Shown here: piece after piece, positions 1,348 through 43,226 of the stretch
How the letters are laid out: each line of letters begins with the position of its first letter
Numbering within the stretch: the first letter of the stretch is position 1
The notes under the pieces: generated by a model
Told to the model about the DNA's origin: nothing
Databases searched by the model: none
The model's input: only the letters and a program-made list of their open reading frames with translations
Assembly (NCBI GenBank): GCA_964247055.1
Contig: OZ176058.1
Coordinates: forward strand, 806,001 to 870,000
Direction of reading: 5' to 3'
Source of the DNA: Paragordius varius
Lineage: Eukaryota > Animalia > Nematomorpha
Length of the DNA: 64,000 nt
Position numbers and translations under genes: made by a program

Positions 1348-4300
1348 ATCACAAAAAGGATCGTGATTCTAGCGTTAAAAACACACCACAAACAGATGCT
1401 AAAAAATCAGCTGATCTTGATACTGAAATTATTGTTGATAAGTCTGGTATTATATTTCTTTAGATAAATTTTGTTTTTAAAATATTTAATAATCATGTAG
1501 TATGTATTATGAAAAAAATATATAAAAAAATTAAATATTTTGATATTATTTGGAATTTATATTCATTAGATAATCGAATTTATTAAAAAAAACATTTTCG
1601 ATTACTACAAATGAAAGATTTATTCAATGTAATAATTAAAATAAAAATATAAATATGAAAATATAGGAAATTAGAAAAAGAAACCAAAAATAAAGATTTG
1701 ATAAGAATAAATTTAATGTCAAATAGTTACCAAAAAACATTAACATATTAATAATAAATTTTAATAATTAAAATCTAAAAATTAAAATATATAACTTTTT
1801 AAAAAATATTTAATTTTTTTTGTAAAAAATTTAAAAATATTAATTAGATACTCAAATGAATGGATTATCTTCTTTTGGTGATTACATTAAAAGTGAAATG
1901 GTTAAAATTGACGCGACTAAAACGGAAACCGAAAAATCAGCTGATCTGGACGAAAAACCGAACGAAAAAAGGGCGAAAACGGTGAAAAGTCATTGTGAAG
2001 AAAGAAAATCGAAAAAGTATATTAACGTATTTTACTTTGGAATTTTAAATTTTTACATATAAACCATTTTATTCTTAAAATTTGTTATGTTTGAAAAATC
2101 AAGAATTTTTTATTTATATTTGTTGTATAACAAGATTATAAGCTAGAGTTTTATTGATTTATTATGCATAAACATTTATTATTGAGATGAGTAAGGGCAA
2201 ACATAAAGTGTTCAGGGTAAATTTGAAAGGGCTAACATAAACGTGTTAAGGATGTTTGAAATGTTTTTTGGATGAATTTAAAGTGTTAAAGGTCTAAATT
2301 TGAAATGGAAGGTAAATATAAAAAATGATTTAAGAAAAAATTTGAAATGCTTTTTTGGATGAATCTGAAGTGTTAAAGTATTAATTTAAAATGGTTTAAG
2401 GGTAAATTAAAAATGTTTAAGGGCAAATATAAAATTATTAAGGGTGAATTTGAAATGTTTTTATGGATGAATTTGAAGTGTTAAATTTTAAATTTAAAAT
2501 GGTTCAAGGGTAAAATTTTGAAATGTTTAAGGGTAAATATAAAATTGTTAAGGTTTGAAGGGTGTTTGAAATGTTTTTATGGATGACATACGTCATAAAT
2601 AATTTGCCCAAGTTCGCTCATATCAGCTGTTTTTTAATTTTTTGTGTAAAAATTAAATTAATTCTTAACCACCCCATGATATTAATCATCTGTTTTGATG
2701 GCCAAAAATAAACTTAATTCAATAAATAAGCTGTTAGTTTCATCGTAAAAATATTCCATTTATTCTCGCCTCTCCAATTAAGAACAGCTGTTGTTTTTTA
2801 AAAAATATTACTTTTTGATGCCGTATACATATATATATGTAAAATGGTTTATATCAGCTGTTTCCTTTAACGTAGTCATCTGTTTTTTCTTTTTACAATT
2901 AGGGAGGAAAAACAGCTGGGAAAAAATCTAAATAGCCGAAGTAGGAGTAAGAGTACTTCAAGTACAAGCTCAAGTGCTTCAAGTACAAGTTCAAGTTCTA
3001 AACGCAACAAAAAGGTGAAAAAACGTGACTCTCGGTCGCCATCGGCAACCAGGAAAACAGCTGATCGTCGGCATCACCATGGTAACGAAAGAAGAAGCAG
3101 TAAAAGAAGGAGTAGTCGTGATAGAAAGAGGGAATCATCTACGTCCAGGTAAGATTAGTTTGAAATAAAAGTAAATTTGTTTAAAAATTGCTATATTTTG
3201 ATTTATAATACGATTAACTCCTTTGAAAATGTATATATTGGAAATTATGCATCCTTAAATATATCATTTCTTTAAATCTCCCCCTTGATTAATTCAAATT
3301 AACCCTCAAATGGATGTTCTTGATTTAAAAAGTACCTATATTTTTATATTTTTAAAAAATAAATTTTTCTTAAATTAAAATAATACTGAAAAAATAATAT
3401 ACTATGCTACATAAAGATATATTTCACTTTAATGGTATATTAGTTCGGAAACACATAATTTATTTTTAGGGTGAATTTGAATTGTTCAAGGATTATTTTG
3501 AACTGTTAATGAACAATAATTCACCCTTGAAAAATTTAAATTCACCCTTATATAAAAAAACATGTTTTAAAATTAAAAATTACCTATATTTTTATATATT
3601 TTTAAAAAATAAATTTTGTTTTTAATTAAAATAATGCCATAAGAATATATTTCTTTTTTATGATGAGTTATATTAGTTCGAAAATACACATATATTTTTA
3701 GGGTGAATTTGAATCGTAAATGGTATATATATCAATTTTTCTGTAATTTTTTTCTGTATAATTATTTATATTATTTGAAAATTTTATTTTGCTTAAATTT
3801 TTACTATCAGCTGTTGTTTATTGCGTTACAGACGCCATCATAGACACCGATCTCCATCAGCTGATCGCCACCGTCATCGAAGGAAACGTTCACCTTCGTC
3901 GTCGTCTAGGCAACGACGCCGACACCGATCATCACGTGATAAAAGCCGGTCGCCTAGGCAACGCTCACGCCGTTCACGTGACGATAATCATCACGATGAC
4001 GATAGAGGAACACGTGACATGACCAAACGATACATTGATGAACGGACGGGAAAAAGTGTTTCCCCTCCACCTAGGTTTTTATTTTTCAAGAATTTCTGTT
4101 TTGAAATTATATTCAATATTTGATAGTTTTAAAAATTATTAAATTATTGTTTGATAGTTTTGAAATTTATTAAATATTTGATTTTAAATTTTTTTAGAAA
4201 ATTAGTAGATTGATAGTTTTAAAAACTATATTTGATAGTTTTGAAAATTATTAAATATTTGATAGTTTTGAAAGTTATTAAATATTTGATAGTTTTGAAA

Positions 4301-5049
4301 ATTATTAAATATTTTATAGTTTTGAAAATTAGTAAATATTTGATAGTTTTTGAAAATTATTAAATATTTGATACTTTTAAAATTTATTAAATATTTGATA
4401 GTTTTGAAAATTTATTAAATATTTGATAGTTTTGAAAAATATTAAATATTTGATTGTTTTAAAAACTAGTAAATATTTAATAGTGTTTGAAAATTATTAA
4501 ATATTTGTTTGATAGTTTTAAAAATTATTAAATATTTGATAGTTTTGAAAATTAGTAAATATTTGATAGTTTTGAAAAATATTAAATAACTGATAATTTT
4601 GCAAATTATTAAATAATTGATAGTTTAGGAAATTAGTAAATATTTGATCGTTTTGAAAATTAGTAAATTTTTGATAGTTTTGAAAATTATTAAATATTTG
4701 TTTGATAGTTTTGAAAATTATTAAATATTTGATAGTTTATAGAATTGAAAATTAATAAATATCTGTTAATTTAAGTGCTTTAAAAGAAAGTTTTACAAAA
4801 AAATCTTTTTTTAGTGTTTTATAAACTTTGACATTTTTTTATGTTTTGGAAAATTTGATTTTTTTTTTTAAATTTGAAAAATTTTATTAAAGTTTTGTGA
4901 AGTTTCTTATTTTTTTAGGGATTTTTGGTCCATATTCATAATAATTTAATAATTTTAACTTTTTAAACTTTTTTTTCTTTTTTTGAAAATTTATATATGA
5001 AATTTAAGATTTTAATAAATTTGTTACTTTAATAAATACTTTTATTGTT

Positions 5050-5083
<34 letters not shown>

Positions 5084-7390
5084 TAATTATTTGAAAAAAA
5101 TTATTTTGATTTTATATATTTTTAGTAACTTTTTATCTATATTATATGTAAACAGGCGTGGAGTTACAGATATAAATGCGCCACCATCTGTTAATAATCC
5201 ATCAGCTGTTACTCAACCACCTAACAACACATCTGAGGAAGATACGTTAACCCCTGAAGTATATATTTATAATTTTTAATTTTTTTTATAATTAAATAAA
5301 AATTTATAATATTTAATTTTTTTATATAATTTACAGCTTCACCCCAAGAATAAATTATTCTGTTTTCGAACTTATATGACTCATAGTTAATATGAAATAT
5401 ATCTTTATGGCCCATAGTTATTATTTTTTAATTATTATTTTAAAATTTAAAACAAAATTTTAAATTTTTTTAAAAATATATAAAAATATAAGGGTAATTT
5501 TAATCTTTAAAAACATTTATCTTATTTGAGGTTGAATTTAAATTGTTTAAGGGTGAATTTAATGTGTTTAAGGGTGAATTTGAATTGTTAATGGTATATA
5601 TATAATTTTCTAGGAAATGTATCAACCCATGCTGTTTAACTCTATTTCCAATAATTCTCTAATTATAATTCTTCTTATATTTTAAATTATTTTTAGCAAA
5701 ATTTAAATACATTTTTTAGAAATTTTATTATTATTTATTTGTAAATTATAATTCTTATTATATCATAAATTTTAAATTATTTTTAGCAATATATAAAATA
5801 ATATATTTTAATGTGAATCATAAATTCTCATTATAAACAACAATATTTTTTATAAATTTATAATTTTTTATATTATTTTCATTGCCATTTTTTGCTCATA
5901 TTAAATTTTTACGTTTTGTCTAAATAAATAATTTCAAAAAAATTATAAAATTTTTGTACTTTTTTTAATAATTTTAAACAATTCAATTTTTATTTATTTT
6001 CACTTTTTTAGGAAGGGGATCAACTTTTTTTTAAAATTTTAACTTTTTCTTTCTTTAAAATACATATATTAATTAATAATTTTCTTTATTTAAAATATAT
6101 AAAATTAATTTTTAATTTTACCTATGTAATTTTGTATATAAATTATACAATTTTTATATATTTTTATTTCGTTTTTTTTGAGTTTTTCTCTTTTTTTTTA
6201 ATTTTTTAATTTTACTTTTGAAAAATTAGTTTTTCTCATTAAATTTTTTTTTAATTTTAAACAACCAAACTTGAGTTTTTAATAATTTTATTTTAATTTT
6301 TTATTTAAATTTTTCATATTTTCAAAATTATTTTTTTTAGGAAAGAGATCAACGTACAGTCTTGTTTATGCAACTTTTTTATAATTATTCATTTCTATTA
6401 ACAATTTATATATAATTAGATTTATAAGGTTTTTTTAAAATCTTTTTTTATTGACTTTTTAGGTATATATATATATATATATTAGTTAAATTATTAAAAA
6501 ACTTTTTAAACTTCTTTTGCAAAAGATGATACATATTAATGAATATTATCAACATATTTACCAACTATATCTGAGTTATTTTAAAATATAAATTTATTTA
6601 AATATATATATTTAAATAAAAATTCAAAAATTTCAATTTTTTTTAAATTTTCTATAGGAAAGAGATCAACGTACAGTGTTGTTTATGCAACTTTTTAAAC
6701 TTTTAACTTTATAATATATTAATTTTCTTGATTTTTTTAAAAAAAAATTTAAGTTTTACCTTATTTTTTTCTAATTTTAAATAAAATATTTTTATTTTAG
6801 ATTAATTTTTTCCTTATTTTTTTCAAATTTTACCTTTGAAAAATTAGTTTTTTACAACTTTTTTTATAACTTTTTTTTTAATAATAGTTTTTTACAACTT
6901 TTTTTTTAAAAAATATACAATTTTTCATATTTATTAAAAAAACAATTCAATTTTTTTTTAATAATTTTCGATAGGAAAGAGATCAACGTACAGTCTTGTT
7001 TATTCAACTTTAGGATTCTTATAATTTTACAATTTTTATATTAACTATATATATATATATATATTATACCATTTACAGTTCAAATTTACCCTCAAAGAAA
7101 TTATGTTTTTTTAAATTAAAAATTAACTATATTTTTAAAAATAAAATATTACGTTTAAAATTAATATAATTCTGAAAAAATAATATACTAAGCGCAATAA
7201 GAATATATTTCTTAATAATTATTTATATTAGTTCGAAAACACATAATTATAGGGTGAATTTTAATTGTTATTTTAAAAATATATATAAATATATATATAT
7301 TTTAAAAAAAAATTCAATTTTTTACTTAAAATTCTTTAGGAAAGAGATCAACGTACAGTCTTGTTTATGCAACTTTAGAATTATAGCTAT

Positions 7391-7421
<31 letters not shown>

Positions 7422-10400
7422 TCATTATAAACGCATTTTTTTCAAACTTTAAACAAATTTTATATTTATATAAATCATTAAATTAATATTTTATACTTTT
7501 TAAAAAAAAATTCAGTTTTTTTTTAAAATTTTTTTCTATAGGAAAGAGATCAACGTACAGTGTTGTTTATGCAATTTTTTTTATAACTATTAACTCTCTA
7601 AAATATATAATTTAAATAAAATACTTTTCTATTCAAAACATATAAAATATCTTAAATTTTTTAAAGTTTTTCCTTATTTTTAAAATTTCTTGAATTTTTA
7701 ATTTTACCCATATGTGATTATAATATATTAAAAAAATTTACATTTTTTACAATTTTTTTCCACTTTTTTAACAAAAATTTTCAATTTTTTCTTTAGGAAA
7801 GAGATCAACGTACAGTGTTGTTTATGCAACTTGGCCCCTACGTGGATGAACGTGATATCATGGATTTCCTCCGGGCTCATGGGAAACGGACCCGTGATGT
7901 TCGAGATATTAGACTCATCGTTGATAGTCGAACTCGAAGATCTAAAGGTCTGGCTTACGTGGAATTCCGCGATCCTGATTCGGTCGCTTTTGTAAGTTTT
8001 TTTGCATAAAAAATTGGATTTTTTGGGAAAAACGATAAAAATGGAGTGTTTTTTAGCTTTTTTGGAAAAAAATGAGTGTTTTTGAAGGTTTTTAAGTAAA
8101 AATTTGATAAAAATTGAGTTATTAGAAAAAAATTGAGATTTTGAGGGTTTACGATTTTTTGGGGGCAAAATGACAAAAATTGAGCGTTTTTAATGGTTTT
8201 TAGGAAAAAAATGATTGATTTTTGAGTAATAATTGATTTTCAGGTGTTTTTCAAGATTTTAGGGTTTTTTAAGATTTTTGGCATGTTTTATTTGTGTTTA
8301 AACCTTTTAAAAAAGGTTTAAACACAGTTTTTAGTTTTTTTAGCTTTGAGTTTAAAAAGCGGACGCGAGATGTTTGAGATATAGACTCATAGTTGATAGT
8401 CGAACTCGAAGATCTAAAGGATTGGCCTACGTCGAATTTAGAGATCCTGATTCGGTCGCTTTTGTAAGTTTTTTTTTGAAAAAATTGGTTTTTTGGGAAA
8501 AAACGATAAAAATGGAGTGTTTTTTAGTTTTTTTGGTAAAAAAATGAGTGTTTTTGAAGGTTTTACGATGTTTTCCTTGAAAAAATGGGTTTTTAGACAA
8601 AAATTTGATAAAAATGGAGTGTTTTTGATGGTTTTTTGGTAAAAAATGAGTTTTTTTGATGGTTTTTAGGCAAAAATTTGATAAAAATTGACAAAAACTG
8701 AGCGTTTTTAAGGTTTTGGTTGTTTTTTGGAAAAAAATGAGTGTTTTTGATGGTTTTTAGGCAAAAGATTGATAAAAATTAAGTTATTTTGATGGTTTTA
8801 CGAAGTTTTTCTTGAAAAAACGCTAAAAATGGAGTTACTTTGACGGTTTTTAGGGTGTTTTTAAGAAAAAATGATTGATTTTTGAGGATCAGGTATTTAG
8901 TCAAGTTTTTAGGGTTTTTCAAGTTGATTAGCATGTTTTATTAGTGTTTTAACCTTTTAAATAAGATATAAGGACAGATTTTAGTTTTTTAGCTTTGAGT
9001 TTTAAAAGCGGACTCGAGATGTTCGAGATATTAGACTCATCGTTGATAGTCGAACTCGAAGATCTAAAGGATTGGCCTACGTGGAATTCCGCGATCCTGA
9101 TTCGGTCGCTTTTGTAAGTTTTTTTCGTAGAAAAATGGATTTTTAAACAAAAATTTGACAAAAATGGAGTTTTTTTTTGGTTTTTTTGGAAAAAAATGAG
9201 TGTTTTTGATGGTTTTTAGGGAAAAAATTGATAAAAAATGAGTTATTTTAAGGGTTTTACCTGTTTTTGTCTAGTTTTTAGGGTTTTTCAAGATTTTTGA
9301 CATGTTTCATTAGTGTTTTAAACATTTTAAAGAAGGTTTTGAGACAGATTTTAGTTAAGCTTTTTTAGCATTGAGATTAAATAACGGACTCGAGATGTTC
9401 GAGATATTAGACTTATAGTTGATAGTCGAACTCGAAGATCTAAAGGACTGGCTTACGTGGAATTTCGCGATCCTGATTCGGTCGCTTTTGTAAGTTTTTT
9501 TTGAAAAAATTGATAAAAAAATGGGTTTTTAGACAAAAATTTGGTAAAAAATGATAAAAATGGAGTTATTTTGAGGGTTCTGGGTGTTTTTGAACATTTT
9601 TTGGAAAAAAGATCATTTATAGATTTTTTCAGGAGTTTTGATGTTTTTTTTTCCTAAAAATAATTCGTATTTTTGTGAAAAAATTTAAAAGTTTTTAGCG
9701 TTTAAATTTGTTTTTTTGTTTTATTAGTGTTTAAACCTTTAAAAAAGATTTTAAAGGCATATTTTAGCTTTTTTAGTGTTGTATGTATATAAAGGACCCG
9801 AGATGTTTGAGATATACCATTTACAGTTCAAATTCACCCTTAACAAATTCACCCTCAAATAAATAACACGATTTTTAAGATTAATAATTACCTATATTTT
9901 TATATATTTTTAAAAAATAAAATTTTGTTTTAAATTAAAATAATACTGAAAAAAATAAATAATTATGCCATAAAAATATATTTAATTTGAATAATGAGTT
10001 ATATTAGTTCGAAAACACACATAATTTATTTTTAGGGTGAATTTGAACTGTAAATGGTATATTTGACTCATATAAGCAATAATTTCGTTCTATAATTTAT
10101 TATATAAATATTAAAATTCTCACATTTTTTGTTTTATCTATTTTACAAGGCTACTCTACCTTGCTTAATGGGCAAAAACTTTCGTGGACGACCCACATTA
10201 TATTTTGTTTTTAATTATTAATATTGTTTTACGTTTTTAATACCTTTTTTTAATTCATTTTTTTGCATACTTTTCTCCCCTAATTCTCTCAAATAAACAA
10301 ATTTTGATATTTATTTAACATATTTTACCATTTTACAATTCAAATTCACCCTTAAACTATTTATTCAAATTCCCACCATAATTTAATATATCTTTTTTAA

Positions 10401-13400
10401 GATTAAATATTATCACCTATATTTTTTTACATACTTTAAAAACAATCAAATTATGTTTAAAAATCAAATAATACTAAAAAATAATAAACTATGCGCTATT
10501 AAAATATGTTTCATATTATAATGAGTTATATTAGCTGCCTGAAAACATATTATTTATATTTTTAAGGTGAATTTGAATCGTTTAAGGGTGAAATTGAATT
10601 GTTCAAGGATAAATTTAAATTTTTCAAGAGTTAATTGAATTGGTCGAGGGTGAATTTGAATTGGTTAAGAGTGAATTTAAATTGCTCAAAAGTTAATTGA
10701 ATTTGTTCGGGGTGAATTTGATTGTTCAAGGGTAAATTTGATTTGTTCAAAAGTAAATTGTTCATGGCTAAATATTAATTGTTCAAGAGTTAATTGAATT
10801 GTTCGAGGGTGAGTTTGAATTGTTCGAGGGTGAATTTGAATTGTTCAAGGGTGATTTGAATACAAGGGTGAAATAAAATTTTCCAAAAGTTAATTGAATT
10901 TTTCAAGGATGAATTTGAATTGTTCAAGGGTAAATTTGAATTGTTCAAGGGTGAATTAAAATTGTTTAACGGTGAATTTGAATTGCTTAAGGGGGTATTA
11001 TGAACTGTTCAAGGGTTAATTAAAATTGTTTAACGGTGAATTTGAATTGCTTAAGGGGGTATTATGAACTGTTAAGGGGTGAATTTGAATTGTTCAAGGG
11101 TAAATTTTAATTCTTCAAAAATGAATTTGAATTGTTCAAGAGTAAATTTGATTTGTTCAAAAGTAAATTGTTCATGGCTAAATATTAATTGTTCAAGGGT
11201 GAATTTGAATTGTTCAAGGGTAATTTTGATTTGTTCAAGGGTAAATTTAAATTCTTCAAAAATGAATTTGAATTGTATAAGGGTGAATATCAATTGTTCA
11301 AGGTTGAATTTGAATTGTTCAAGGGTGATTTGAATACAAGGATGAAATAAAATTTTTCAAAAGTTAATTGAATTTTTCGAGGGTGAATGAATTGGTTAAG
11401 GGTGAATTTTAATTCTTCAAAAATGAATTTGAATTGTAAACGGTATATTATCCATTTTTAACATTTTTTCATTTTTATCTATTTTAAAAGGCTACTACCT
11501 TACTTAATGGGCAAAAACTACGTGGCCGTCCCATTATAGTTCAACACAGTCAAGCTGAAAAAAATAGGATTGCCGCATCACTTGTAGCTGGTTTTCCCAC
11601 TCAAACTGGTTCATTACAGTATGAGTAAGTTTTTTTTATATATTTTTATAATACCCTTGAATAATTCCAATTTACCCTTTGAAGAATTTAAATTAACCTT
11701 AAAGAATTCAAGTTGGTCCTTAAAAACTTTAAATTTACTCTAAAAATAATATTATTTTACCTTGAAAAGTTTAAATTTACTCTTGAATAATTTATATTTA
11801 TTCTTGAATAATATAAATTTACTCTAAATAATATACCATTTACGGTTCAAATTTACTCTTGAACAATTTAAAATTACCCTTGAACAATTTAAATTTAATC
11901 TTGAATAATTCAAATTCATTCTTGAACAATTCAAATATACCCTTGAACAATTCAAATTGACCCTTGAACAATTCAAATTCACACCCTTAAACAATTTAAA
12001 TTTACCCTTAAACCGTTTAAATTCACCCCTTGAATAATTAAAAATTTAAATTTACCCCTTGAACAATTCTAATTTACCTTGAATTCTAATTTCCCTTTAG
12101 CAAAATTTACCTTTGAACAATTTAAATTCACTCTAAAAATATTATGCCATTTACAAATTAGATTCACCCTTGAACAATTCAAACCCTAAAAGTAAATTTT
12201 ATGTTTTCGGGCATACTCATCATTAAAATATTATTTTTTCAGTATTTTTATGATTACGTACAAAATTTTCATTTTAAAAAATATAAAAAAAATATAGGAA
12301 TATTTAATCTTAAAAAACACATAATATATTTGAGGGTGAATTTAAATTGTTCGAAGGTGAATTTGTATTGTTTAAGGGTGAATTTGAACTGTAAATGGTA
12401 TACATAATATATATAACTTCTAGTAAATATTGAAATTATACTATGGACAAAACGTAAAAATATAAAGACTAACATTTTTTTATCAAAATACAACCCAACC
12501 ATACTTTTTAAACCTTAAAGATGTATATAGGTAATACAATTACAGTAAAAATTCAAATTATACTATTAAAACGTAAAATTATAAAGACATCTATTTTTTT
12601 TCAAAACACAACCCCATACTTTATTATAAACCTTAAAAATGCCATTGAAAACACAATTACAGCAAAAATTGAAATTATACTATGGAGAAAACATAAAATT
12701 ATAAAGACAGCTATTTTTTTCAAAAGACAATCCCATACTTTTTTAAACCAACTCAATTACAGTTTTATACTAAGGACAAAACGTAAAAATATAAAGACTA
12801 TCATTTTTTTATCAAAAGACAACTCAGCCATACTTTTTAAACCTTAATTTTTCTTTAATTTGCCATGTAATACGATTGTAAAATATTAAAACTTTAGAAA
12901 AATATTTTATTTGTCTATATATTTGCTTTTGTCCATATAATTTTAATTTTTACGATATATATACATATAACTTTTAATCACCTTGAACCCATTTAAATCT
13001 TAATTTAAGTATATACTTTAATGTATTTTTTTATATTAATTTTTTTTTGTTTTATTAATTATTAATTTATTTTATTACAATCTAATTTTAGCTCCCTTGT
13101 GATAAATAACTCCATTGGTGGCGCATTAAACGCGGGCGGCGTTCAATCAGCTGGTGGTCCGAAACAACCAACACCCCTGAAATTATATGTGGGTACTTTG
13201 CATCCCGAAATAACGGAAGATATGTTGAAGGCAATTTTTGAACCTTTTGGAAAGGTATTTTTGAATTTTAATCAAAAAAATTATTAAAAATAATTAAATT
13301 TTTATTAAAATTGGTTAAAAATGGTTTAAAAATAAGTGTAAAGATGAAAAAATCATTTAAAATGTTGTAATTTTGGTGAAAATTGGTTAAAAATTGGTTA

Positions 13401-16400
13401 AAAATTGAATAGTATAACATATTTAACAAACCTCTTAACGTAAAAAATTAAAAAAATGGGTAAAAAATCTGTTTTAGGGTGAAAAAATATTAAAACTATG
13501 AAATTATTAAAAATGGTTAAAATGATTAAAAACGCTTAAAAAATATGTTTAAAGTGAAAAAAATGGTTAAAAACGCTTAAGAAATTCGTTTAAATGGTTT
13601 AAAATAATTTAAAAAAATTATATGTGGGAACTTTGCATTCCGAAATAACGAAAGATATGTTGAAGGCAATCTTTGAACCTTTTGGTAAGGTATTTATTAC
13701 AAAAAACTAATAAAAATTTAAAAAAATAGTTGAAATTTTAATAAAAATTAGCTAAAAATGGTTAAAAACGCTTAAGATATACGTTTAAATTGAAAAAATT
13801 GGTTAAAAATAATATAAAATGCTTTTTTAATGGTTTAAACTGAAAATTTTTTAAAAAAATTATATGTGGGTATTTTGCACCCCGAAATAACGGAAGATAT
13901 GTCGAAGGCAATCTTTGAACCGTTTGGAAAGGTAAAAATTAAAATCTAAAAATAGTGGATTATAAATAAAAATTGGTTAAAAACGCTTAAGAAATACTGA
14001 ATTTGATAATTGTGAGAAATGAGAGTTAAAAGTGGTAAAAATGGTATATTTTTTGTGAAATAAGCTTAAAAATTGTTTAACATAGTGTGAAATTCTCAAT
14101 GATTATTATTTTTTAAAATTTGGGTTAACCTCCTTGAAATTGTATGTTGGCATTTTGCATTAACGCAAAATATGTTGAAAGCAAGCTTTGAACCTTTTTG
14201 GAAAGGTAAAAATGTGTTGATATAGTGAAATTTGGTAAATTTTAATTAAAAATAGTGAAATTGTAATATTAAAGAAAAAAGTTAAAAATGGTGTTAAAAA
14301 CGCTTAAGAAATACGTTTAAAGTCAAAAAATTGGTTAAAAATTATGCAAAATGTTAAATCTTTTTTTAATGGTTTAAAATAAATTAAAACTGTTTTGAAA
14401 CAACTATCCCACTCTGTATTATATATGGGAACTTTGCATCCCGAAATAACTAAATATATGTTGAAAGCAATCTTTGAACCTTTTGGAAAGGTAAATTATG
14501 ACAAAAATTATATTAAAAAAAAATAGTTGAATTTTAATTAAAAATTAGCTAAAAATGATTCAAAAATAAGTTCGAAGGTTAAAAATGGTAAGATACACAT
14601 TTAAAAATAGCTTTTTAATGAAAATTGGTTAAAAATTGAATAGTATATTACACAAACCTTTTTCGGGTTAAAAAAAATTGTAAAAAATTGCTAAATATGT
14701 TTGAGAGTGAAATATTTTTAATTAAAAATAGTTAAATTTTGATTAAAATTGGCTAAAAATGATTCAAAAATAAGTTTAGAGGTAAAATATCATTTAAAAT
14801 AATGTAATTTTGGTGAAAATTGGTTGAAAATATGCCAAAAAGCTTGAGAGCCACACAATGGGTAAAAATATTATATAGTTGGTTAAAGTTGTTAAAATTA
14901 ATTAATTTTGATTTAAAATACGACTGACTCTTTGAAATTCTATGTGGGAACTCTTTTAATAAGAACAATTTTTAGTATTTTATTTTAAATATATTTTTAT
15001 AAATAATATCTTTATTTTTATTAAAGTTTTATTTTATGTTATAATTTTAGATTGATTATATAACTTTAATTATGGATCACGAGACCCGAAAATCACGTGG
15101 GTACGGATATATTCAAGTTAGTTTATAAATAATATATATATATATATAATTTTTAGTATTTTTTATTTATTTATAATAAAATAATCTATTTCAAATATTT
15201 TTTAAATGATAATACTTTAAAAATTATTAATTTAGTAAAAAACATATTTTTTGGACCATCAATCTTATAAAGACAATATTTTTTTAAGACATGGCTCTAT
15301 ACTTTTGAAAATTTTTAATTTTTTTAAAAATCAATAACTTGAAAAGTATGTAATCGAAGAGTAAAATTTGCCAATATTTTAATAATTTTTTATATTTTAA
15401 AATTCTAATCAAATAATTTATATATAAAATATAAAAATTATAACCTTTTTAATAAAAATTTCATTATTTTTTAATTCTATCGTTATTAAGAAAGTATTTT
15501 AACGGTAAAAACTGCATTTATACGTAAGAGTACAAAACGTAAAAATATAAAGACAAATGTTTTATTTTTAAAAGACATTAACCATACTTTTTTAAGTAGC
15601 CTTGTAATATTTTTTCTATAAAACTCTTTAATATTATTAAAATTTTAAAATATATGATTGATTGTGTGTTACCATTGTACAGTAAAAATAGAAATTATAC
15701 GGACAAAACGTAAAAATATAAAATTAAAAATATTTCGAGATTAATTATTTTTATTTTTAAGGATTTTTTTTAAATTATTTTTTTTAAATTTTTTTAAAAT
15801 CAAACTATATTTTATTTTCTAGTTTCACGATTCTGAAGACGCTAAACGCGCTCTTGAAAGTTTAGATGGTTTTGAATTGGCTGGTAAGGCTATGCGAGTA
15901 AGTACTCACGATTCTGAACAAGTAAATACTTCATCAGCAAAGGCTGAAAAAAGTCCAGAAGAAACTAGAAATAGTAGTCGAGACTCTAAGAAAACGAGCA
16001 AAAAGGACAATAAAGAATGTAAGTTTTTTGGTCTTTTAAATATTTTTATAGATTTCTTCAAGAGTTTAAGAAAGTTTTGTATGATTTTTTATCTTTTTAT
16101 CAGAGTATTTTAGCTGAAAATATTGATTTTACATGTGTAGAGTAAAAATATTGTTTTTTTGAGTATTTTTGATCTTAAATGTAAAAATTTTGAGCAGTTC
16201 TTGAACTGGCTGCTAAGGCTATGCGAGTAAGTACTCATGATTCTGAACAAGTAAATACTTCATCAGCAAAAGCTGATTCTATTAGCAAAAGTCCTGAAGA
16301 AACTAGAAATAATAGTCGAGACTCTAAGAAAACGAGCAAAAAGGATAATAAGTTTACGTCCTTTGAAAAATGTAATTTTTTTGGTTTTTTATTGCTTTCT

Positions 16401-19400
16401 TGCGGGTTTTTAAATGGAAGAAGGGGGAATTTGAATTTTTACAGAGTTTATAAAGAGTTTTTTTGATATTTTACTCTTTAGATAGTATTTGAGCTGAAAA
16501 TATTGATATTAGATGGTTTTTGAGTGTTTTTTTGATCCTAAATGTAAAAAATTTTGATTTTTTGAGCAAAAAGCTTATACGAGTAAGTACTCACGATTCT
16601 TAACAAGTAAATACTTCATCAAAATCTGATTCTATTGGCAAAAGTCCTGAAGAAACTAGAAATAGTAGCGACTCTAAGAAAACTAGCAAAAAGTACAATA
16701 AAGAAACGTCCTATGAAAAATATATATTTATTGGTTTTTTAATTTACAAATGTTTTTAGATGGGATTTTTTGGATTATCTTCTCTCTAGAGAGTTTTTGA
16801 GCTAAAAATATTAATTTTAGATGGTTTTTGAGTTAAAAATAGGATTTTTCGAAGTTTTTTTGATCTTAAGTGTAAAAAATTTGAACTGGCTGGTAAGGCT
16901 ATGCGAGTAAGTACTCACGATTCCGAACAAGTAAATACTTCATCATCAATAGCTAAGAAAAGTCCAGAAGAAACTAGAAATAGTAGTCGAGACTCTAAGA
17001 AAACTAGTAAAAAGGACATTAAAGAATGTAAGTTTTTTGGTTTTTTAAATATTTTTAGAGTTCTTGAAGAGTTTTTTATGTTTCTTTTTTTGGAGTATGA
17101 AAATACTGATTTGAAAAAAAGCTAAAAGGACAATAAAAAAACCATAGAAATATGTGAGTTTTTTGCTTTTTTTAAATTTTTTACAGAGTTCAAGAGTTTT
17201 TTTAATTTTTTGTTTTATTAGTAGTATTTGAGCTAAAAATATTAGTTTTAGAGAGCTTTTGAATGTTTTTATCTTTAATGTAAATATTTTGAGCATTTTT
17301 TGAACTGGCGGGTAAGGCTATGCGAGTTAGTACTCACGATTCTGAACAAGTAAATACTTTATCAGCAAAAGCTGAGAAAAGTCCAGAAGAAACTAGAAAT
17401 AGTAGTCGAGACTCTAAGAAAACAAGCAAAAAGGACAATAAAGATTGTAAGTTTTTTGGTTTTTTAACACAAAACATCAATTTTTCGGTTTTTTCTTTTT
17501 ATAGAATATATTTGGCCTAAAAATATTAATTTTAGATGGTTTTGAGTAAAATAAGATATAGAAAACGAGCAAAAAGTACAATAAAGAAACGTCCTTTGAA
17601 AAATGTAAGTTTTTTGGTTTTTATTATATTTTTTAGGGGTTTTATGAAAGGTTTTTTGGTTTTTTCTTTTTAGAGAGTTTTTGAGCTAAAAATATTGATT
17701 TTAAATGGTTTTTCAGTTATTTTTGGACATTTTTTTAGTTTTTTTGATCCTAAATGTAATTTTATCTTTTTATAGAGTATCTGAGCTAAATATTGATTTT
17801 AGATGGTTTTTGAATAAAAATATTGATTTTTGAGTATTTTTGATTTTAAATGTAAAAATTCTGGGCATATTTTGAACTGGCGGGTAAGGCTATGCGAGTA
17901 AGTATTCCAGATTCTGAACAAGTCAATACTACTTTAGCAAAAGCTGAAAAAAGTTTTGAAGAAACTAGAAATAGTAGTCGATACTCTAAGAAAACGAGCA
18001 AAAAGGATAATAAAGAAACGCCCTTTGAAAAATGTAAGTTTTTTGGTTTTTTATTGAATTTTTTAGGGGGGATTTTTTGGATTTTTTCTCTTTAGAGAGT
18101 ATTTGAGCAAAAAATAATAATTTTTGATGGTTTTTGTGTATTTTTGGGTATTTTTTAAGTTTTTTTCATCTTAAATGTAATTTTACCCTTTGGATAGTAT
18201 TTGAGCTTAAAATATTGATTTTCAAAAAAGCAAAAAGGACAATAAATAAATGTCCTTTAAAAAATGTAAGTTTTTTGGTTTTTTAACTCAAAACATCAAT
18301 TTTTTCGGTTTATTTTTCTTTTTATAGAATATATTTGATCTAAAAATATTGGTTTTAGATGGTTTTCGAGTTAAATTATTGATTTAGAAAACGAGCAAAA
18401 AGGATATTAAGGAAACGTCCTTTGAAAAATGTAGTTTGTTGGTTTTTTATAATATTTTACAGAGTTCAAGAGTTTGAAAAGAGTTTTTTTATTTTTTTTA
18501 TAGAATATTTGAGCTGAAAATATTGATTTTAGATGGTTTTTGAGTAAAAATATTGATTTAGAAAACGAGCAAAAAGGATAAAGAAACCATTGAAAAATGT
18601 AATTTTTTTGGTTTTTTATGATTTTTTTGCGTGTTCTATAGAGTTTAAAAAGAGTTTTTTATTAGATAGTATTTGAGCTGAAAATATTTAAAAGGTTTTT
18701 GACTAAATATGGTATTTTTTGTAAAAAGGCTATGCGAGTAAGTACTCATGATTCTGAACAAGTAAATACTTCATCAGCAAAAGCTGAGAAAAGCAAAAGT
18801 CCTGAAGAAACTAGTAATAGTAGTCGAGACTCTAAAAAACGAGCAAAAAGGAAAATAAAGAAACTCATTTGAAAAATGTAGGTTTTTTTGGTTTTTTAAC
18901 TCAAAACATCAATTTTTATAGATTTCTTTAAGACTTTTAAACGAATTTGTATGATTTTTTTCTTTTTATCAGAGTATTTTAGTTGAAAATATTGATTTTA
19001 CATGGTTTTAGAGTAAAAATATTGATTTGTTAAAGTTTTTTGATCTTTAATGTAAAAAATGTTGAGCATTTTTTGAACTGGCGGGTAAGGCTATGCGAGT
19101 AAGTACTCATGATTCTGAACAAGTAAATACTTCATCAGCAAAAGCTGAAAAAAGTCCTGAAGAAACTAGAAATAGTAGTCAAGACTCTAAGAAAACGAAC
19201 AAAAAGGATAATAAAGAATGTAAGTTTTATGATTTTTTAATTTAAAAGGTTTTTTAGATGGGTTTATGAGATTTTACTATTTAGAGAGTATTTGAGGTGA
19301 AAATATTGAATTTAGATGGTTTTTGAGTGTTTTATCCATCATAAATGGAAAAGGGTTTTTGACCAAAAAAATATCTCATGAAGCTATTACTAATCAACAA

Positions 19401-40699: not shown

Positions 40700-43226
40700 G
40701 TTTTCATTTTAAAATATATTCTTTTAATTAATGACGCCACTTTATATATATATATATATATAGTAAAACTTACCAAACATCTTTTGATTTTGACTGACAA
40801 CTTTTAAATCATTTTCATGATTATAGGTGAGATCTCTATTAGAGGGGCTTTTCATATTAACAATTTTATCATTGCTTTGTTGAGTAACTATAGTTGAATT
40901 TTCAATTACAGAAATTTCAGATGTATTCGTATTGGTATTATTATAACCATATCGGGCCAATAATATTTCTATTGGTAATTCTGCTTCCTACAATATAATA
41001 TAAAATATAAATTACATAAAACAGTAAAAATCAGCTAAAATCACCCTTAAACAATTCAAATTCACCCCCTTGAACAATTCAAATTCATCCTTGGAAAATT
41101 CAAATTCACCCCTGAGCAATTCAAATTTACCCTTGAACAATTTAAATCACCCTTGAACAATTCAAATCACCCTTGAACAATTCAAAATCACCCTTGACCA
41201 ATTCAAATTCACCCTTGAACAATTAAAATTCACCCTTAAACAATTCAAAATTACCCTCGAGCAATTCAAATTCATCCTTAAACAATTCTAATTTACCCTT
41301 GAGCAAATTTAAATTCACCCTCGAACAATTCAAATTCACCCTTGAACAATTCAAATTCACCCTTAAACAATTCAAATTCACCCTTAAACAATTCAAATTC
41401 ACCCTTGAGCAATTCAAATGCACTCTCAAATAATTTATATGTTTTTTAAAAATTACCCCTATATTTTTATATATTTTTAGAAAATCCAAAATTTTGTTTT
41501 AAATTAATATAATACTATTGAAAAACTAATAAACTATGAGCGACATAAAGGTATATATTTCATATTAATAATGAGTTATATTAGTTGTTCGAAAACACAT
41601 AATTTATTTTTAGGTTTCAGTTCAAATTCACCCTTAAACAATTTGAATTCACCCCCTCAAATAATTTTTGTGTTTTTTAAGATTAAAAAATATCTCTAAT
41701 TTTTATATATTAAAAAAATCTAAAAAATTTTTTAAATTAAAATAATACTACTGTGAAAAACTAATAAAATGCGCGCCATAAAGATATATATCATATAAAT
41801 AATGAGTTATATTAGTTGTTCGAAAACACATAATTTATTTTTAAGTTACAATTCAAATTGTTCAAGGGTGATAATTGAAGTGTTCAAGGGGTAAATTTTA
41901 ATTGTTCAAGGGTGAATTTGAATTGTTCGAGGGTGAATTTGAACTGTAAATGGTATAATATTTTTGATTCAATAATCTTTCCAGTCCAATAATTTCATAT
42001 GTTTTATAATGAAACCAGTATTCGTATAATTAACTAAGGTTATTTGCCATCAAATTTTTGAAATTAAAAATGAAAATTTTAACTTTTTACAATAAAAATA
42101 ATATAAAACTTACTTTGTTAAAAATTGAAAAGTATGATTGAAATAGAAAGGTATATTGGTAATACAATTAATTATATATATATATGATTTATAATTGTAA
42201 TTATTAAATATATTTTAAACAAATTAGTCAAAGTTATAAAAAGTATGGTGTTTTCTTTTGGAAAAACAAATTGTCTTTATACAATTTTTACTGTAGTTTT
42301 CAAAAACTTCTGTGGTCAAAACACACATCTAACGGTTATAGCGGTTCGAGTCTTCAAACCCAATTTTGACAGTTATAACCGTATTTTTAGCGCTGCTAAC
42401 TACCCCATTTTTAGGGGTTTTAAACTGCTTTTTGAAACCGTTTTTTTTTATTCAAACCCAATTTTAACAGTTATAACCCGGTTTTAAACCCGTGTTTAAA
42501 AACGACGATGTACATACATTAGCTAGGTCCGTGAGTTCATTATCAGATTGGGAATTTTGGCCATCAGCTGATGCTGCCGCCAGCTGTTCTTCCTGTTCCA
42601 GCGTTTCTTCATCATCTTGACTATCAAAGTCTGAGGCATCAAACTCATCTGTGAGCCATAAAATATAGATTGCGTATTTAAAGTATTAATTTGGGGGCAG
42701 GCATAAAATTTTGTATGAATTATTTAGTAATAAATATAAAATTAAGAGTATTTTTTTAAAATTTAATATATTAAATTAAATTAGGTTTTTCTAAAAATCA
42801 TTTTTATAAATACAAATAATTAAATTTTGACTTTATATAATATGGAGTGAGTAAAAGAACTGAAATATTCTTAAATTAAAAATATCAATTAAAAGAATTT
42901 GGTTTATGATAAATTATAAAAAATATTTGGAATCTGAAAGACGACTAAAATTTTACAATTTTTCATAAAAATTAATATCTAATAGATTAAATATGTATTT
43001 TATACATTTTTAGGTGATATATTAAAAAAAATTGAAGATTTTTGGCAAATCTAAAATATATACCGCTTTCGGACATATAACTATCATCATCCTGAATAAA
43101 AATAAACATATATTGTTAAATATTTTTAAAACTGTAAAAATATTATAGAAAAACGGAAAATTTAAAGTAAAATAAAATATATATGTGAAAAAAATAGCAT
43201 AATATCTTTTTAACAGATACCTCCAT
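31270..43226 (-). CDS. MIER1: MIER-family (mesoderm induction early response) ELM2-SANT transcriptional corepressor; 11 coding exons; in-frame TAA at 32004-32006
   Basis: Minus-strand exons: 43226-43221 (ATG GAG), 43091-43064, 42648-42518, 40987-40774, 39841-39628, 39062-38999, 37646-37481, 34845-34724, 33698-33582, 32726-32648, 32101-31995, 31524-31270 (TGA); all phases agree (12 segments counting the 6-nt ATG exon). Motifs: DDEETLEQEEQ, EAELPIEILLARYGY, DYLPPEIWKK|QINVGEEFQANIP (ELM2), PDNEM|ALSTL, EWTLDDCQAFENGLIEFGKNFHQI, VGDLIFFYYFWKKSERHD (SANT). The paralog number (MIER1/2/3) cannot be assigned. Confidence 0.9.
34356..36432 (-). repeat. One donor-side and five acceptor-side copies around MIER exon 34845-34724
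   Basis: Donor-side copy ATACCCTTTGAGAATATCGCGTAGGATTAATTAAGGGTTCAAAG (+ strand) at ~34356-34406. Acceptor-side copies TTTAACCA(TT/AG)CATTGATATGG...TCAACTA at ~35160, 35531, 35795, 36008 and 36392. Confidence 0.92.
38076..38610 (+). repeat. Direct duplication of ~175 bp in a MIER intron (38076-38252 and 38438-38610)
   Basis: Near-identical blocks TGTTCTAATGTAATTTCC...TTCCTAAGGAAAAGA.ATTTGCGTCATTTCATTAGGAAAAGA...CCGAACATTTTTACACATATAT.TGCGCC. Confidence 0.85.
41030..41956. mobile_element. MITE family A composite with ~18 tandem 21-bp units and two cores
   Basis: TTGAACAATTCAAATTCACCC array at ~41040-41425, two copies of the core at ~41430-41840, right end GAACTGTAAATGGTATA at ~41941-41957. 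Confidence 0.82.

What the first reader, a model, noticed from the sequence alone, without database searches (positions are those of the whole stretch)
7887..9489. Donor-side echoes of RBM39 RRM1 differ almost only at synonymous sites, even from each other
Seen, against exon nt 7887-7991: copy 9009-9113 has 5 changed codons, all synonymous (ACC>ACT, CGT>CGA, GGT>GGA, CTG>TTG, GCT>GCC). Copy 9385-9489 has 6, all synonymous. Copy 8360-8463 has 9 synonymous (including CGC>AGA), one nonsense and one 1-nt deletion. Copies 9009 and 9385 differ from each other at 5 codons, all synonymous. Established: neutral point changes in a reading frame are about three-quarters nonsynonymous. Inference: these 'intronic' copies have been under protein-level selection, or are recently captured divergent alleles of the exon. 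This suggests they swap into the coding exon (unequal crossover, gene conversion or somatic DNA rearrangement) or are spliced in.
Basis: partly seen in the sequence, partly recalled or inferred. Interest (0 to 1): 0.9.

Follow-up and report, generated by a model that had tools for sequence, protein, structure and literature searches.

The report
Intronic exon copies differing only synonymously
Three copies of the last 105 bases of an RBM39 exon sit in the intron behind it and differ from the exon, and from each other, almost only at silent codon positions, which implies they were read as protein for most of their history, although whether they are used today could not be tested.

Summary
Against exon part 7887-7991, copy 9009-9113 has 5 codon changes, 9385-9489 has 6 and 8360-8463 has 9. 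All are synonymous. Copy 8360 also has one nonsense change and a 1-nt deletion.

The live exon's own branch adds only synonymous changes, so 29-47% synonymous is expected. With that null, five other echo arrays of this gene (D, E, G, H, A) look like neutral copies beside a constrained exon.

This array does not: 12 synonymous events against 1 nonsense (P about 1e-5 to 8.5e-4). Among the copies alone, codon positions 1+2 differ by 0.029, position 3 by 0.133 and flanks by 0.13-0.24.

The 105 nt match an ancestral separate exon, because Limulus and Pecten have an intron at GK|V and Gordionus one 12 nt further on.

Best reading (about 0.4): these are tandem exon copies that were, or for 9009 perhaps still are, spliced in. 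Copies 8360, 9385 and 9794 now show first disabling lesions. Exchange by crossover or gene conversion is disfavoured. RNA evidence could not be obtained. Other readers of this scan noted echo arrays elsewhere in this genome.

The parts
5156..5258 (+). Upstream RBM39 exon (...EEDTLTPE). Its donor is GTATAT at 5259. The intron after it (TPE|ERD) is absent in Gordionus, Limulus and Pecten.
6339..6376 (+). Acceptor-side echo: AG plus the first 36 nt of the live exon. It is the first of five; the others are at 6656-6693, 6973-7010, 7338-7375 and 7540-7577. None has a donor. Islands are 94-100% identical although the flanks are almost unalignable.
7797..7991 (+). Live RRM1 exon: 195 nt, phase 0-0, acceptor TTCTTTAG|, donor GTAAGT at 7992. 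It consists of a 36-nt part echoed upstream, a unique 54 nt and a 105-nt part echoed downstream.
7887..7991 (+). B0, the exon part that the echoes copy (RTRDVRDIRLIVDSRTRRSKGLAYVEFRDPDSVAF). It equals the ancestral separate 96-nt exon plus 12 nt coding RTRD.
8360..8463 (+). Echo e1: 9 synonymous codon differences (including the probably ancestral AGA), a CGA>TGA nonsense change and a 1-nt deletion. It is preceded by AAAAAG| and followed by GTAAGT.
9009..9113 (+). Echo e2: 5 synonymous differences and an intact 35-codon frame. It is bounded by TTTTAAAAG| and GTAAGT, so it is an in-frame exon of 105 nt by sequence.
9385..9489 (+). Echo e3: 6 synonymous differences and an intact frame. It has no AG at its 5' edge (AAATAA|CGG), and an in-frame TAA lies just upstream.
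9794..9815 (+). Echo e4: a truncated fifth copy of 22 nt that shares the TGA. It is cut off where a repeat family begins (ACCATTTACAGTTCAAATT...).
8235..8359 (+). Pre-island segment shared by the units; other copies lie at 8885-9008, 9255-9384 and 9668-9793. It is T-rich with several AGs and ends ...TTTTTTAGCTTTGAGTTTAAAAAG. It diverges at about 0.16-0.24 among the first three units.
10150..10205 (+). Decayed acceptor-side echo of the next exon: 4 synonymous and 1 nonsynonymous substitutions plus three frame-breaking insertions.
11491..11624 (+). Next live exon (ATTLLNGQKLRGRPIIVQHSQAEKNR...), with acceptor TTTTAAAAG|. It is flanked by inverted arrays of a 21-nt satellite.

Best explanation
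The echoes are tandem copies of what used to be a separate small exon of RBM39. That exon encodes the beta2-beta3/RNP1 part of RRM1.

The array was made by tandem duplication of a unit running from the 3' splice region through 105 coding nt and GTAAGT into the 5' part of the intron. For most of the time since then (neutral divergence about 0.2), the copies evolved under the same protein-level purifying selection as the copy now in use. The simplest cause is that the spliceosome used them as exons, so a damaged copy produced damaged RBM39.

In the first copy, the conserved intron in front of this exon was lost, which fused it to the upstream exon (live exon 7797-7991). The downstream copies are now stranded and are starting to decay:
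- 8360 has a stop and a frameshift.
- 9385 has lost its AG.
- 9794 is truncated.
- 9009 is still a complete in-frame exon by sequence and may still be included at a low level.

Shown: the array structure, the codon-periodic divergence, the ancestral exon boundary in relatives and the lesions. Inferred: past or present splicing, and the order of events.
For: 1. Codon signature among the copies themselves: positions 1+2 at 0.029, position 3 at 0.133, flanks at 0.13-0.24. pS 0.18-0.23 is about equal to flank divergence of 0.10-0.24, while pN is 0-0.027. The event count is 12 synonymous, 1 nonsense and 1 indel.
2. The null of neutral copies plus a constrained exon predicts 33-47% synonymous. Its mean was 23-36 nonsynonymous events (10-18 synonymous).
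3. Limulus and Pecten have a phase-0 intron at GK|VRDV followed by a separate 96-nt exon that ends where the live exon ends. Gordionus has the intron 12 nt downstream. The echoed segment therefore corresponds to an ancestral whole exon rather than an arbitrary exon piece.
4. 8360 and 9009 start right after AAAAG|, the same acceptor type as the live exon at 11491. All copies keep GTAAGTTTTTTT. The island is 35 whole codons in phase 0-0, and 9009 is open as a 105-nt cassette.
5. Codon 28 of 8360 is AGA, one step from Gordionus AAA. The live CGC is two synonymous steps further, as expected for long divergence under amino-acid constraint.
6. Other arrays of the same gene show ordinary neutral decay, so the method can detect decay.
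Against: - No RNA evidence was obtained.
- Run X11 holds the exon's words but did not reach the 5% threshold on 6200-10000. That hints weakly that its contigs lack the echoes.
- The echo's 5' edge (K|RTRD) lies 12 nt upstream of the Gordionus intron (D|V). It flanks the conserved position but is not identical to it, so a duplication breakpoint landing there by chance (about 13%) is possible.
- 9385 has neither an AG nor an open path, yet it has no nonsynonymous change.
- The TGA of 8360 is shared with 9794, whose flank is 37-41% diverged. Either this is a parallel CpG change or the stop is old.
- All copies encode the same peptide, so they add no isoform diversity. Inclusion after the fused exon would duplicate half an RRM.
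- 'Clean' echoes in other arrays do not correlate with having an in-frame acceptor.
- The array was chosen as striking among many in this genome. P of 1e-5 to 8.5e-4 is not decisive genome-wide.
Confidence: 0.4

Rival explanations
1. Neutral copies beside a constrained exon, with this array being the tail of a large distribution. The synonymous excess would come from the live exon's branch plus staggered copy births. The lack of nonsynonymous changes in the copies would be chance, made visible because a reader picked the most striking array.
For: This null fits five of the seven other arrays of the gene: D 13:13, E 16:26, G 7:11, H 3:3, A 1:2. Copy-private events outside this array run at dN/dS about 0.6-0.8. 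Scan notes say echo arrays are found throughout the genome, so thousands of arrays may exist and a P of 1e-4 would occur somewhere.
Against: P is 1e-5 to 8.5e-4 for this array. Heterogeneity among arrays gives chi-square about 17.7 on 7 df (computed by hand from the counts). Several single echoes in other arrays show the same deficit: 17298 at 6:1, 25515 at 3:0, 20181 at 5:1. Divergence between copies is itself codon-periodic, which staggered births can explain only down to pN/pS 0.5.
Confidence: 0.18
2. Frozen snapshots. Echo islands would be held at the nucleotide level by a non-coding role, for example decoy or helper splice sites in very long AT-rich introns. The live exon keeps drifting at synonymous sites. 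Differences would then mark when each island was copied or patch-converted from the exon.
For: Islands are far better kept than flanks in every array. The acceptor-side islands 6339-7577 are 94-100% identical, synonymous sites included, and cannot be exons because they lack a donor. Some clean echoes cannot be spliced in frame: 20181, 21052 and 9385. AGA in 8360 looks ancestral.
Against: Each of the three copies has private synonymous states and they conflict: codons 22/23 group 8360 with 9009, while codons 11/27 group 8360 with 9385. A linear series of snapshots therefore needs 4-6 reversals or several very short conversion patches. Echoes in arrays D, E and G are clearly not frozen (pN up to 0.17). 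No known non-coding function spares exactly the third codon positions.
Confidence: 0.15
3. Capture. The islands were overwritten by gene conversion from diverged but functional versions of the exon, namely deep alleles, an introgressed haplotype or a paralogue. They would have been born differing only synonymously.
For: It explains synonymous-only differences and the mosaic of shared states. A preprint reports possible introgression in one horsehair-worm genus.
Against: It needs at least three different donors with dS about 0.2. Gordionus heterozygosity is 0.55%. A second sample of the organism shares as many words with the window as the first. All copies share the same pre-island|island junction, so they descend from one intronic copy. 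The match between synonymous and flank divergence would be a coincidence. No paralogue was seen in the window or in Gordionus.
Confidence: 0.1
4. Exchange-driven indirect selection, which is the reader's 'swap'. Copies would recombine or convert into the live exon often enough that a damaging change in a copy is selected against.
For: The tandem homology permits it. The live exon shares each of its variable states, except three, with some copy.
Against: Exchange fast enough to matter (rate times Ne above 1) would homogenise synonymous sites. They are as diverged as the flanks (0.18-0.23 against 0.10-0.24), so exchange is about as slow as mutation. The induced selection coefficient would then be of the order of the mutation rate and ineffective at the Ne implied by 0.5% heterozygosity. 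This is an inference from standard population genetics.
Confidence: 0.07

Closest known systems
Tandem exon duplication giving mutually exclusive or cassette exons, including unannotated duplicates in introns (PMC9013439; PMC12772994, abstracts seen)
   Same: Same-strand copies of an exon lie in the adjacent intron, with equal length and phase, an AG in front and a GT behind. The sequence signature is that of coding constraint.
   Different: The copies encode an identical peptide, so they add no isoform diversity. The first copy is fused to the upstream exon, so the copies equal only 105 of its 195 nt. One copy lacks an acceptor and one carries a stop. Expression is untested. The array sits in a gene, and by scan notes a genome, full of partial exon-edge repeats that mostly decay neutrally.
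Pseudogene against parent-gene comparisons, where constraint on the parent branch alone gives dN/dS near 0.5 (established knowledge)
   Same: This explains five other echo arrays of this gene (D, E, G, H, A), and explains why synonymous differences exceed 25% even for dead copies.
   Different: For this array pN/pS is 0.04 (exon against copy) and 0.09 (copy against copy). Both are well below the 0.5 floor of that model.
Concerted evolution of tandem repeats by gene conversion
   Same: It may account for the near-identical acceptor-side islands at 6339-7577.
   Different: It cannot spare third codon positions, and here synonymous sites are not homogenised.
Poison exons of splicing regulators, including vertebrate RBM39 (from general knowledge, not tested here)
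   Same: Copy 8360 is an AG...GT-bounded segment with an in-frame stop, inside the intron of a splicing-factor gene.
   Different: Poison exons are conserved at the nucleotide level, not codon-periodically. No evidence of inclusion or of NMD coupling was obtained.

Membership tests
Tandemly duplicated alternative exon (mutually exclusive or cassette) | Same-strand copies of the exon in the adjacent intron | tested here: met
   A 4.05-unit tandem array spans 7887-9815.
Tandemly duplicated alternative exon (mutually exclusive or cassette) | Each copy is bounded by a usable 3' and 5' splice site | tested here: inconclusive
   All copies have GTAAGTTTTTTT. 8360 and 9009 have AAAAG| in front. 9385 has AAATAA| and an in-frame TAA upstream. 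Splice-site use was not measured.
Tandemly duplicated alternative exon (mutually exclusive or cassette) | The copy corresponds to a whole exon of the same length and phase | tested here: inconclusive
   Each copy is 105 nt in phase 0-0, but only the 3' 105 nt of the present 195-nt exon. It matches the ancestral separate 96-nt exon of Limulus and Pecten plus 12 nt. The Gordionus intron lies 12 nt away from the echo edge.
Tandemly duplicated alternative exon (mutually exclusive or cassette) | Coding constraint on the copies | tested here: met
   Copy-against-copy pN/pS is 0.09. Positions 1+2 differ by 0.029, position 3 by 0.133 and flanks by 0.13-0.24. P is 1e-5 to 8.5e-4 against the corrected null.
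Tandemly duplicated alternative exon (mutually exclusive or cassette) | Inclusion in mature mRNA | not testable with these tools
Both run searches are used. No transcript-derived protein of this species was found.
Neutral intronic pseudo-exon copies | dN/dS near 1 on copy-private branches, and at least 0.5 against the parent | tested here: not met
   For array B, private events are 5 synonymous against 0 nonsynonymous, and pN/pS is 0.04-0.09. The feature is met for arrays D, E and G of the same gene.
Concerted evolution by gene conversion | All site classes are homogenised relative to the flanks | tested here: not met
   Synonymous divergence of 0.18-0.23 is about equal to flank divergence.
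RRM_1 domain (PF00076) | Profile match above the curated cut-off | tested here: met
   The exon scores 31.7 bits. The echo peptides score 26.9 bits on profile positions 25-52. The cut-off is 20.7.

The most novel reading that the evidence does not exclude
The intronic copies are kept translatable without being conventional exons. They would form a standing set of synonymous versions of an essential exon segment that is substituted into the gene or its mRNA, by recombination, repair or unconventional splicing. Protein-level selection would then reach DNA that is formally intronic, and this would be one visible case of a genome-wide 'exon-edge echo' system.
Probability: 0.12. Interest if true: 0.85.

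Novelty: new variant of a known kind. Interest (0 to 1): 0.58.

Why it matters
If the copies are or were spliced, this locus records a rare sequence of events in an essential splicing-factor gene. An ancestral exon was duplicated in tandem, all copies were held under purifying selection with identical products, and loss of a conserved intron then stranded them.

It also supplies a calibrated test for the many exon-edge repeat arrays reported in this very AT-rich genome, which is probably a horsehair worm or a close relative. Most arrays behave as neutral copies. The correct neutral expectation is about 30-47% synonymous, not 25%.

If RNA shows no use of these copies and relatives still show constraint, then intronic DNA would be under protein-level selection by an unknown route. 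That would be surprising.

Tried and rejected
RNA and DNA reads:
- No reads could therefore be laid, and the relatives' loci (organisms B and C) could not be inspected.

Sequences of the species or close relatives:
- A protein search with the 65-aa exon found no candidate.
- Searches with the Gordionus protein and with a mixed alignment found no protein of this species.
- The exact look-up of an echo ORF found nothing.

Homology and coding checks:
- The pre-island segments are not a decayed copy of the exon's 5' part (no significant homology).
- They are not homologous to Gordionus introns.
- The middle 54 nt of the exon, with or without a donor, has no echo. There is thus no direct relic of a donor at the A|B boundary.
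- An antisense reading frame was rejected as the source of constraint. The antisense ORFs over the exon and over 9009 differ in amino acids.
- Cassette competence (in-frame AG and an open frame) does not separate clean from decayed echoes.
- Limulus, Pecten and Gordionus have no duplicates of the small exon.

Other:
- Recursive splicing was considered and rejected, because no AG|GT ratchet junction would be regenerated (sequence).
- CpG decay was considered. About ten CpGs are kept in all copies, apart from the one that gives the TGA.
- The literature searches found no description of such arrays.
Full report
**What is there**

The window is about 20% G+C. On the + strand, from about 1.9 to 27.7 kb, it carries an RBM39/CAPER-type gene with small exons and kilobase-long introns.

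The exon in question is 7797-7991. It is 195 nt long, in phase 0-0, with acceptor TTCTTTAG| and donor GTAAGT. It encodes ERDQRTVLFMQLGPYVDERDIMDFLRAHGKRTRDVRDIRLIVDSRTRRSKGLAYVEFRDPDSVAF and matches Pfam RRM_1.

The nearest protein in 1.8 billion representatives is RBM39 of Gordionus sp., a horsehair worm (Nematomorpha). It is 67% identical over the exon and 73% in a tblastn alignment. It shares the unusual LFMQLGPYV.ERDIMDFL and DVRDIRLIVDSRTR.SKGLAYVEF stretches. The organism is probably a nematomorph or a close ally, but I could not name it.

**The observation**

- 9009-9113 differs from 7887-7991 at 5 codons.
- 9385-9489 differs at 6 codons.
- These two copies differ from each other at 5 codons. 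All of these changes are synonymous, and both copies translate to the same 35 residues as the exon.
- 8360-8463 has 9 synonymous codon differences, including CGC>AGA. It also has CGA>TGA and a 1-nt deletion.
- A truncated fifth copy at 9794-9815 shares the TGA.

The copies are the coding islands of a tandem array of 4.05 units. Each unit runs island, GTAAGTTTTTTT, about 100 nt of alignable intron, a variable stretch of about 31-nt sub-repeats, and about 125 nt of a shared pre-island segment. That segment ends in AAAAG in front of 8360 and 9009, in AAATAA in front of 9385 and in ATAAA in front of 9794.

Upstream of the exon lie five acceptor-side echoes, each AG plus the first 36 nt of the exon. 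The middle 54 nt of the exon has no copy.

Runs from a second sample of the same organism hold 72-77% of the sampled 31-mers of 6200-10000. The array sequences are therefore present in an independent sample; the tandem order itself was not checked there.

**The right null**

That figure holds only for changes on a copy's own neutral branch. A difference between exon and copy can also arise on the exon's branch, where only synonymous changes survive.

I used three mutation spectra, one of them estimated from 3290 aligned flank positions. The share of random changes that are synonymous is 0.17-0.32. The expected synonymous share of exon-copy differences is 0.29-0.48.

Gene conversion from the exon into a copy, or staggered copy births, does not change this. 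Any stretch copied from the exon at time t gathers exon-branch synonymous changes and copy-branch changes of all kinds over the same t. Between two copies born from the exon at different times, pN/pS cannot fall below 0.5.

**All arrays of the gene**

I aligned eight echo arrays of this gene to their live exons and counted mutational events.

| Array | Synonymous | Nonsynonymous or stop |
|---|---|---|
| Total | 60 | 59 (56 + 3 stop) |
| D | 13 | 13 |
| E | 16 | 26 |
| G | 7 | 11 |
| H | 3 | 3 |
| A | 1 | 2 |
| C | 4 | 1 |
| F | 5 | 1 |
| B (this finding) | 12 | 1 nonsense, plus 1 indel |

The B row counts CGC>AGA by its all-synonymous path. One search printed 11 synonymous, 1 nonsynonymous and 1 stop, and the Total row keeps its raw sum.

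Events private to one echo run 29 synonymous against 46 others. Without array B they run 24 against 45, a dN/dS of about 0.6-0.8. Live-private and echo-shared patterns run 24 against 8.

In most arrays the copies decay about neutrally, and the synonymous excess maps to the exon lineage. The 'recurrent bias' noted elsewhere in this window is therefore mostly the expected pseudogene-type effect.

There is real heterogeneity, however. Chi-square among arrays is about 17.7 on 7 df, computed by hand from the counts. A few single echoes elsewhere also lack nonsynonymous changes: 17298 at 6:1, 25515 at 3:0 and 20181 at 5:1.

**This array does not fit the null**

With genealogies fitted to the observed synonymous distances, the expected synonymous share is 0.33-0.39. 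The chance of at least 12 of 13 is then 1e-5 to 1e-4. With the most conservative bound of 0.47 it is 8.5e-4.

In explicit simulations of neutral copies beside a constrained exon, tuned to give 10-18 synonymous events, the mean was 23-36 nonsynonymous events. None of 9000 runs had one or fewer.

The signature holds without the live exon. Among 8360, 9009 and 9385 alone:
- codon positions 1+2 differ by 0.029;
- position 3 differs by 0.133;
- the flanking intron segments differ by 0.13-0.24;
- copy-to-copy pS is 0.18-0.23, about equal to flank divergence, while pN is 0-0.027.

Each copy has its own private synonymous states, and the shared states conflict. Codons 22/23 group 8360 with 9009, while codons 11/27 group 8360 with 9385. 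The copies therefore cannot be a simple time series of snapshots of the exon.

G+C-rich nonsynonymous positions should decay fastest in a genome whose introns are about 15% G+C, yet they are untouched. An antisense frame cannot be the cause, because the antisense ORFs differ in amino acids between the exon and 9009.

The caveat is the look-elsewhere effect. Scan notes report such arrays across this genome, and this one was picked as striking. The P value is convincing for the window (8 arrays) but not for thousands of arrays.

**What the 105 nt are**

In Limulus and Pecten, RBM39 has a phase-0 intron exactly at GK|VRDV. It is followed by a separate 96-nt exon (VRDV...SV.LA) that ends at the position where the live exon here ends.

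Gordionus has the same small exon of 93 nt. Its intron lies after a nematomorph-specific four-residue insertion (GKKTKD|VRDIRL).

In the window species that intron is absent from the live exon. A new intron (TPE|ERD) lies in front of it, which none of the three relatives has.

The echoed segment starts at K|RTRDV, on the other side of the same four-residue insertion. The echoes are thus near-exact copies of an ancestral whole exon plus 12 nt. They are whole codons in phase 0-0, all followed by GTAAGT. In 8360 and 9009 they are preceded by AAAAG|, the same kind of acceptor as the live exon at 11491. By sequence, 9009 is a complete in-frame 105-nt exon, as another first-stage note also said.

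None of the three relatives has a duplicate of this exon, so the array is specific to this lineage.

**Most likely history and mechanism (confidence about 0.4)**

1. A unit holding the small exon with its splice regions was duplicated in tandem.
2. The copies were recognised by the spliceosome, so each was kept under the protein's purifying selection while synonymous sites and flanks drifted to about 0.2.
3. Loss of the conserved intron fused the first copy to the upstream exon.
4. The others, now useless or harmful, began to decay. 8360 gained a stop and a frameshift, 9385 lost its AG, and 9794 was truncated by a repeat.
5. 9009 is still intact and could be included at a low level, or in some condition.

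AGA in 8360 is one step from Gordionus AAA and two synonymous steps from the live CGC. That fits long divergence under amino-acid constraint.

Shown are the structure, the statistics, the ancestral exon and the lesions. Splicing and the order of events are inferred.

**Weak points**

- There is no RNA evidence.
- Run X11 holds 93% of the exon's words but did not reach the 5% threshold on the 3.8-kb region. It would have reached it if its contigs also held 9009 or 9385. This is a weak hint against abundant inclusion.
- The echo edge is 12 nt from the Gordionus intron. A random breakpoint landing that near has a chance of roughly 13%.
- 9385 cannot be spliced in frame, yet it has no nonsynonymous change.
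- The TGA shared by 8360 and 9794 is either a parallel CpG change or old.
- Identical peptides give no isoform diversity.
- In other arrays, clean echoes are not the ones with in-frame acceptors.

**Rivals**

- Chance tail of the neutral null: 0.18.
- Nucleotide-level 'frozen' islands plus synonymous drift of the exon and patchy conversion: 0.15. Support comes from the near-identical, donor-less acceptor-side islands and from island-against-flank contrasts in all arrays. Against it stand the private and conflicting synonymous states, and clearly unfrozen echoes elsewhere.
- Capture from diverged functional alleles or a paralogue: 0.10. It needs several donors at dS about 0.2, against 0.55% heterozygosity in Gordionus and a single shared junction.
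Exchange fast enough to transmit selection would have homogenised the synonymous sites, which are as diverged as the flanks.

**Comparison and novelty**

The closest known kind is tandem exon duplication with alternative use of the copies, including unannotated duplicates in introns (PMC9013439; PMC12772994). This case differs in four ways:
- the peptides are identical;
- the first copy is fused to its upstream exon;
- the other copies are partly decayed;
- the locus sits in a gene full of partial exon-edge repeats.

I file it as a new variant of a known kind. The membership feature 'included in mRNA' remains untested.

Noticed in passing
window 10566-11437 and 11652-12048: The live exon 11491-11624 is flanked by arrays of a 21-nt satellite (GGTGAATTTGAATTGTTCAAG) in opposite orientations. 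The arms are up to 168 nt long and 70-86% complementary. Inverted repeats of this kind around an exon could pair in the pre-mRNA and favour skipping or circularisation. The same satellite recurs at 41037-41423.
   Followed up: no
window 5259-7796 compared with L001, L002, L003: The 2.5-kb intron at TPE|ERD is absent in Gordionus, Limulus and Pecten. The conserved GK|V intron is absent here. That makes two intron-position changes within 65 codons. The lineage-specific intron is the one filled with acceptor-side echoes.
   Followed up: partly
window 6339-7577: Five acceptor-side echoes (AG plus 36 nt) are 94-100% identical to the exon start, synonymous sites included, although their flanks are almost unalignable. 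They have no donor. This pattern (nucleotide-level conservation or recent homogenisation) differs from that of the donor-side array.
   Followed up: partly
window 15823-19240: There are six donor-side echoes of the RRM2-end/linker exon. Four of them (16185, 17870, 18726, 19058) share synonymous states and then differ mostly by nonsynonymous changes, as if one old copy had been amplified. Echo 17298 has 6 synonymous changes against 1 nonsynonymous. Several are open in-frame cassettes behind a GAG| acceptor. Indels of 9, 6 and 15 nt occur.
   Followed up: partly
window 7058-7103, 9806-9851, 11825-11870: A shared sequence (ATATACCATTTACAGTTCAAATTYACCCT) marks the start of the satellite-bearing repeat. 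At 9816 it cuts off the fifth echo. It may be the end of a mobile element.
   Followed up: no
window 7887-7991 compared with all echoes: The only two states private to the live exon are CGT and GGT, where every echo has CGA and GGA. Both differences remove a GT dinucleotide from the echoes; in the live exon they read CC|GTGATG and AAAG|GTCTGG. This may be chance.
   Followed up: no
window 4098-4738; 52798-52852 and 53288-53343: A 27-nt tandem repeat of 23 copies lies just behind the RS-domain exon. A 56-nt direct repeat (95% identical, about 490 nt apart) lies outside RBM39 and may be an echo in another gene.
   Followed up: no
literature: Horsehair-worm mitochondrial genes are reported to carry long perfect inverted repeats inside coding sequence (PMC6649704). 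This is a different, organellar phenomenon, but it is another case of repeats embedded in coding DNA in what is probably the same phylum.
   Followed up: no
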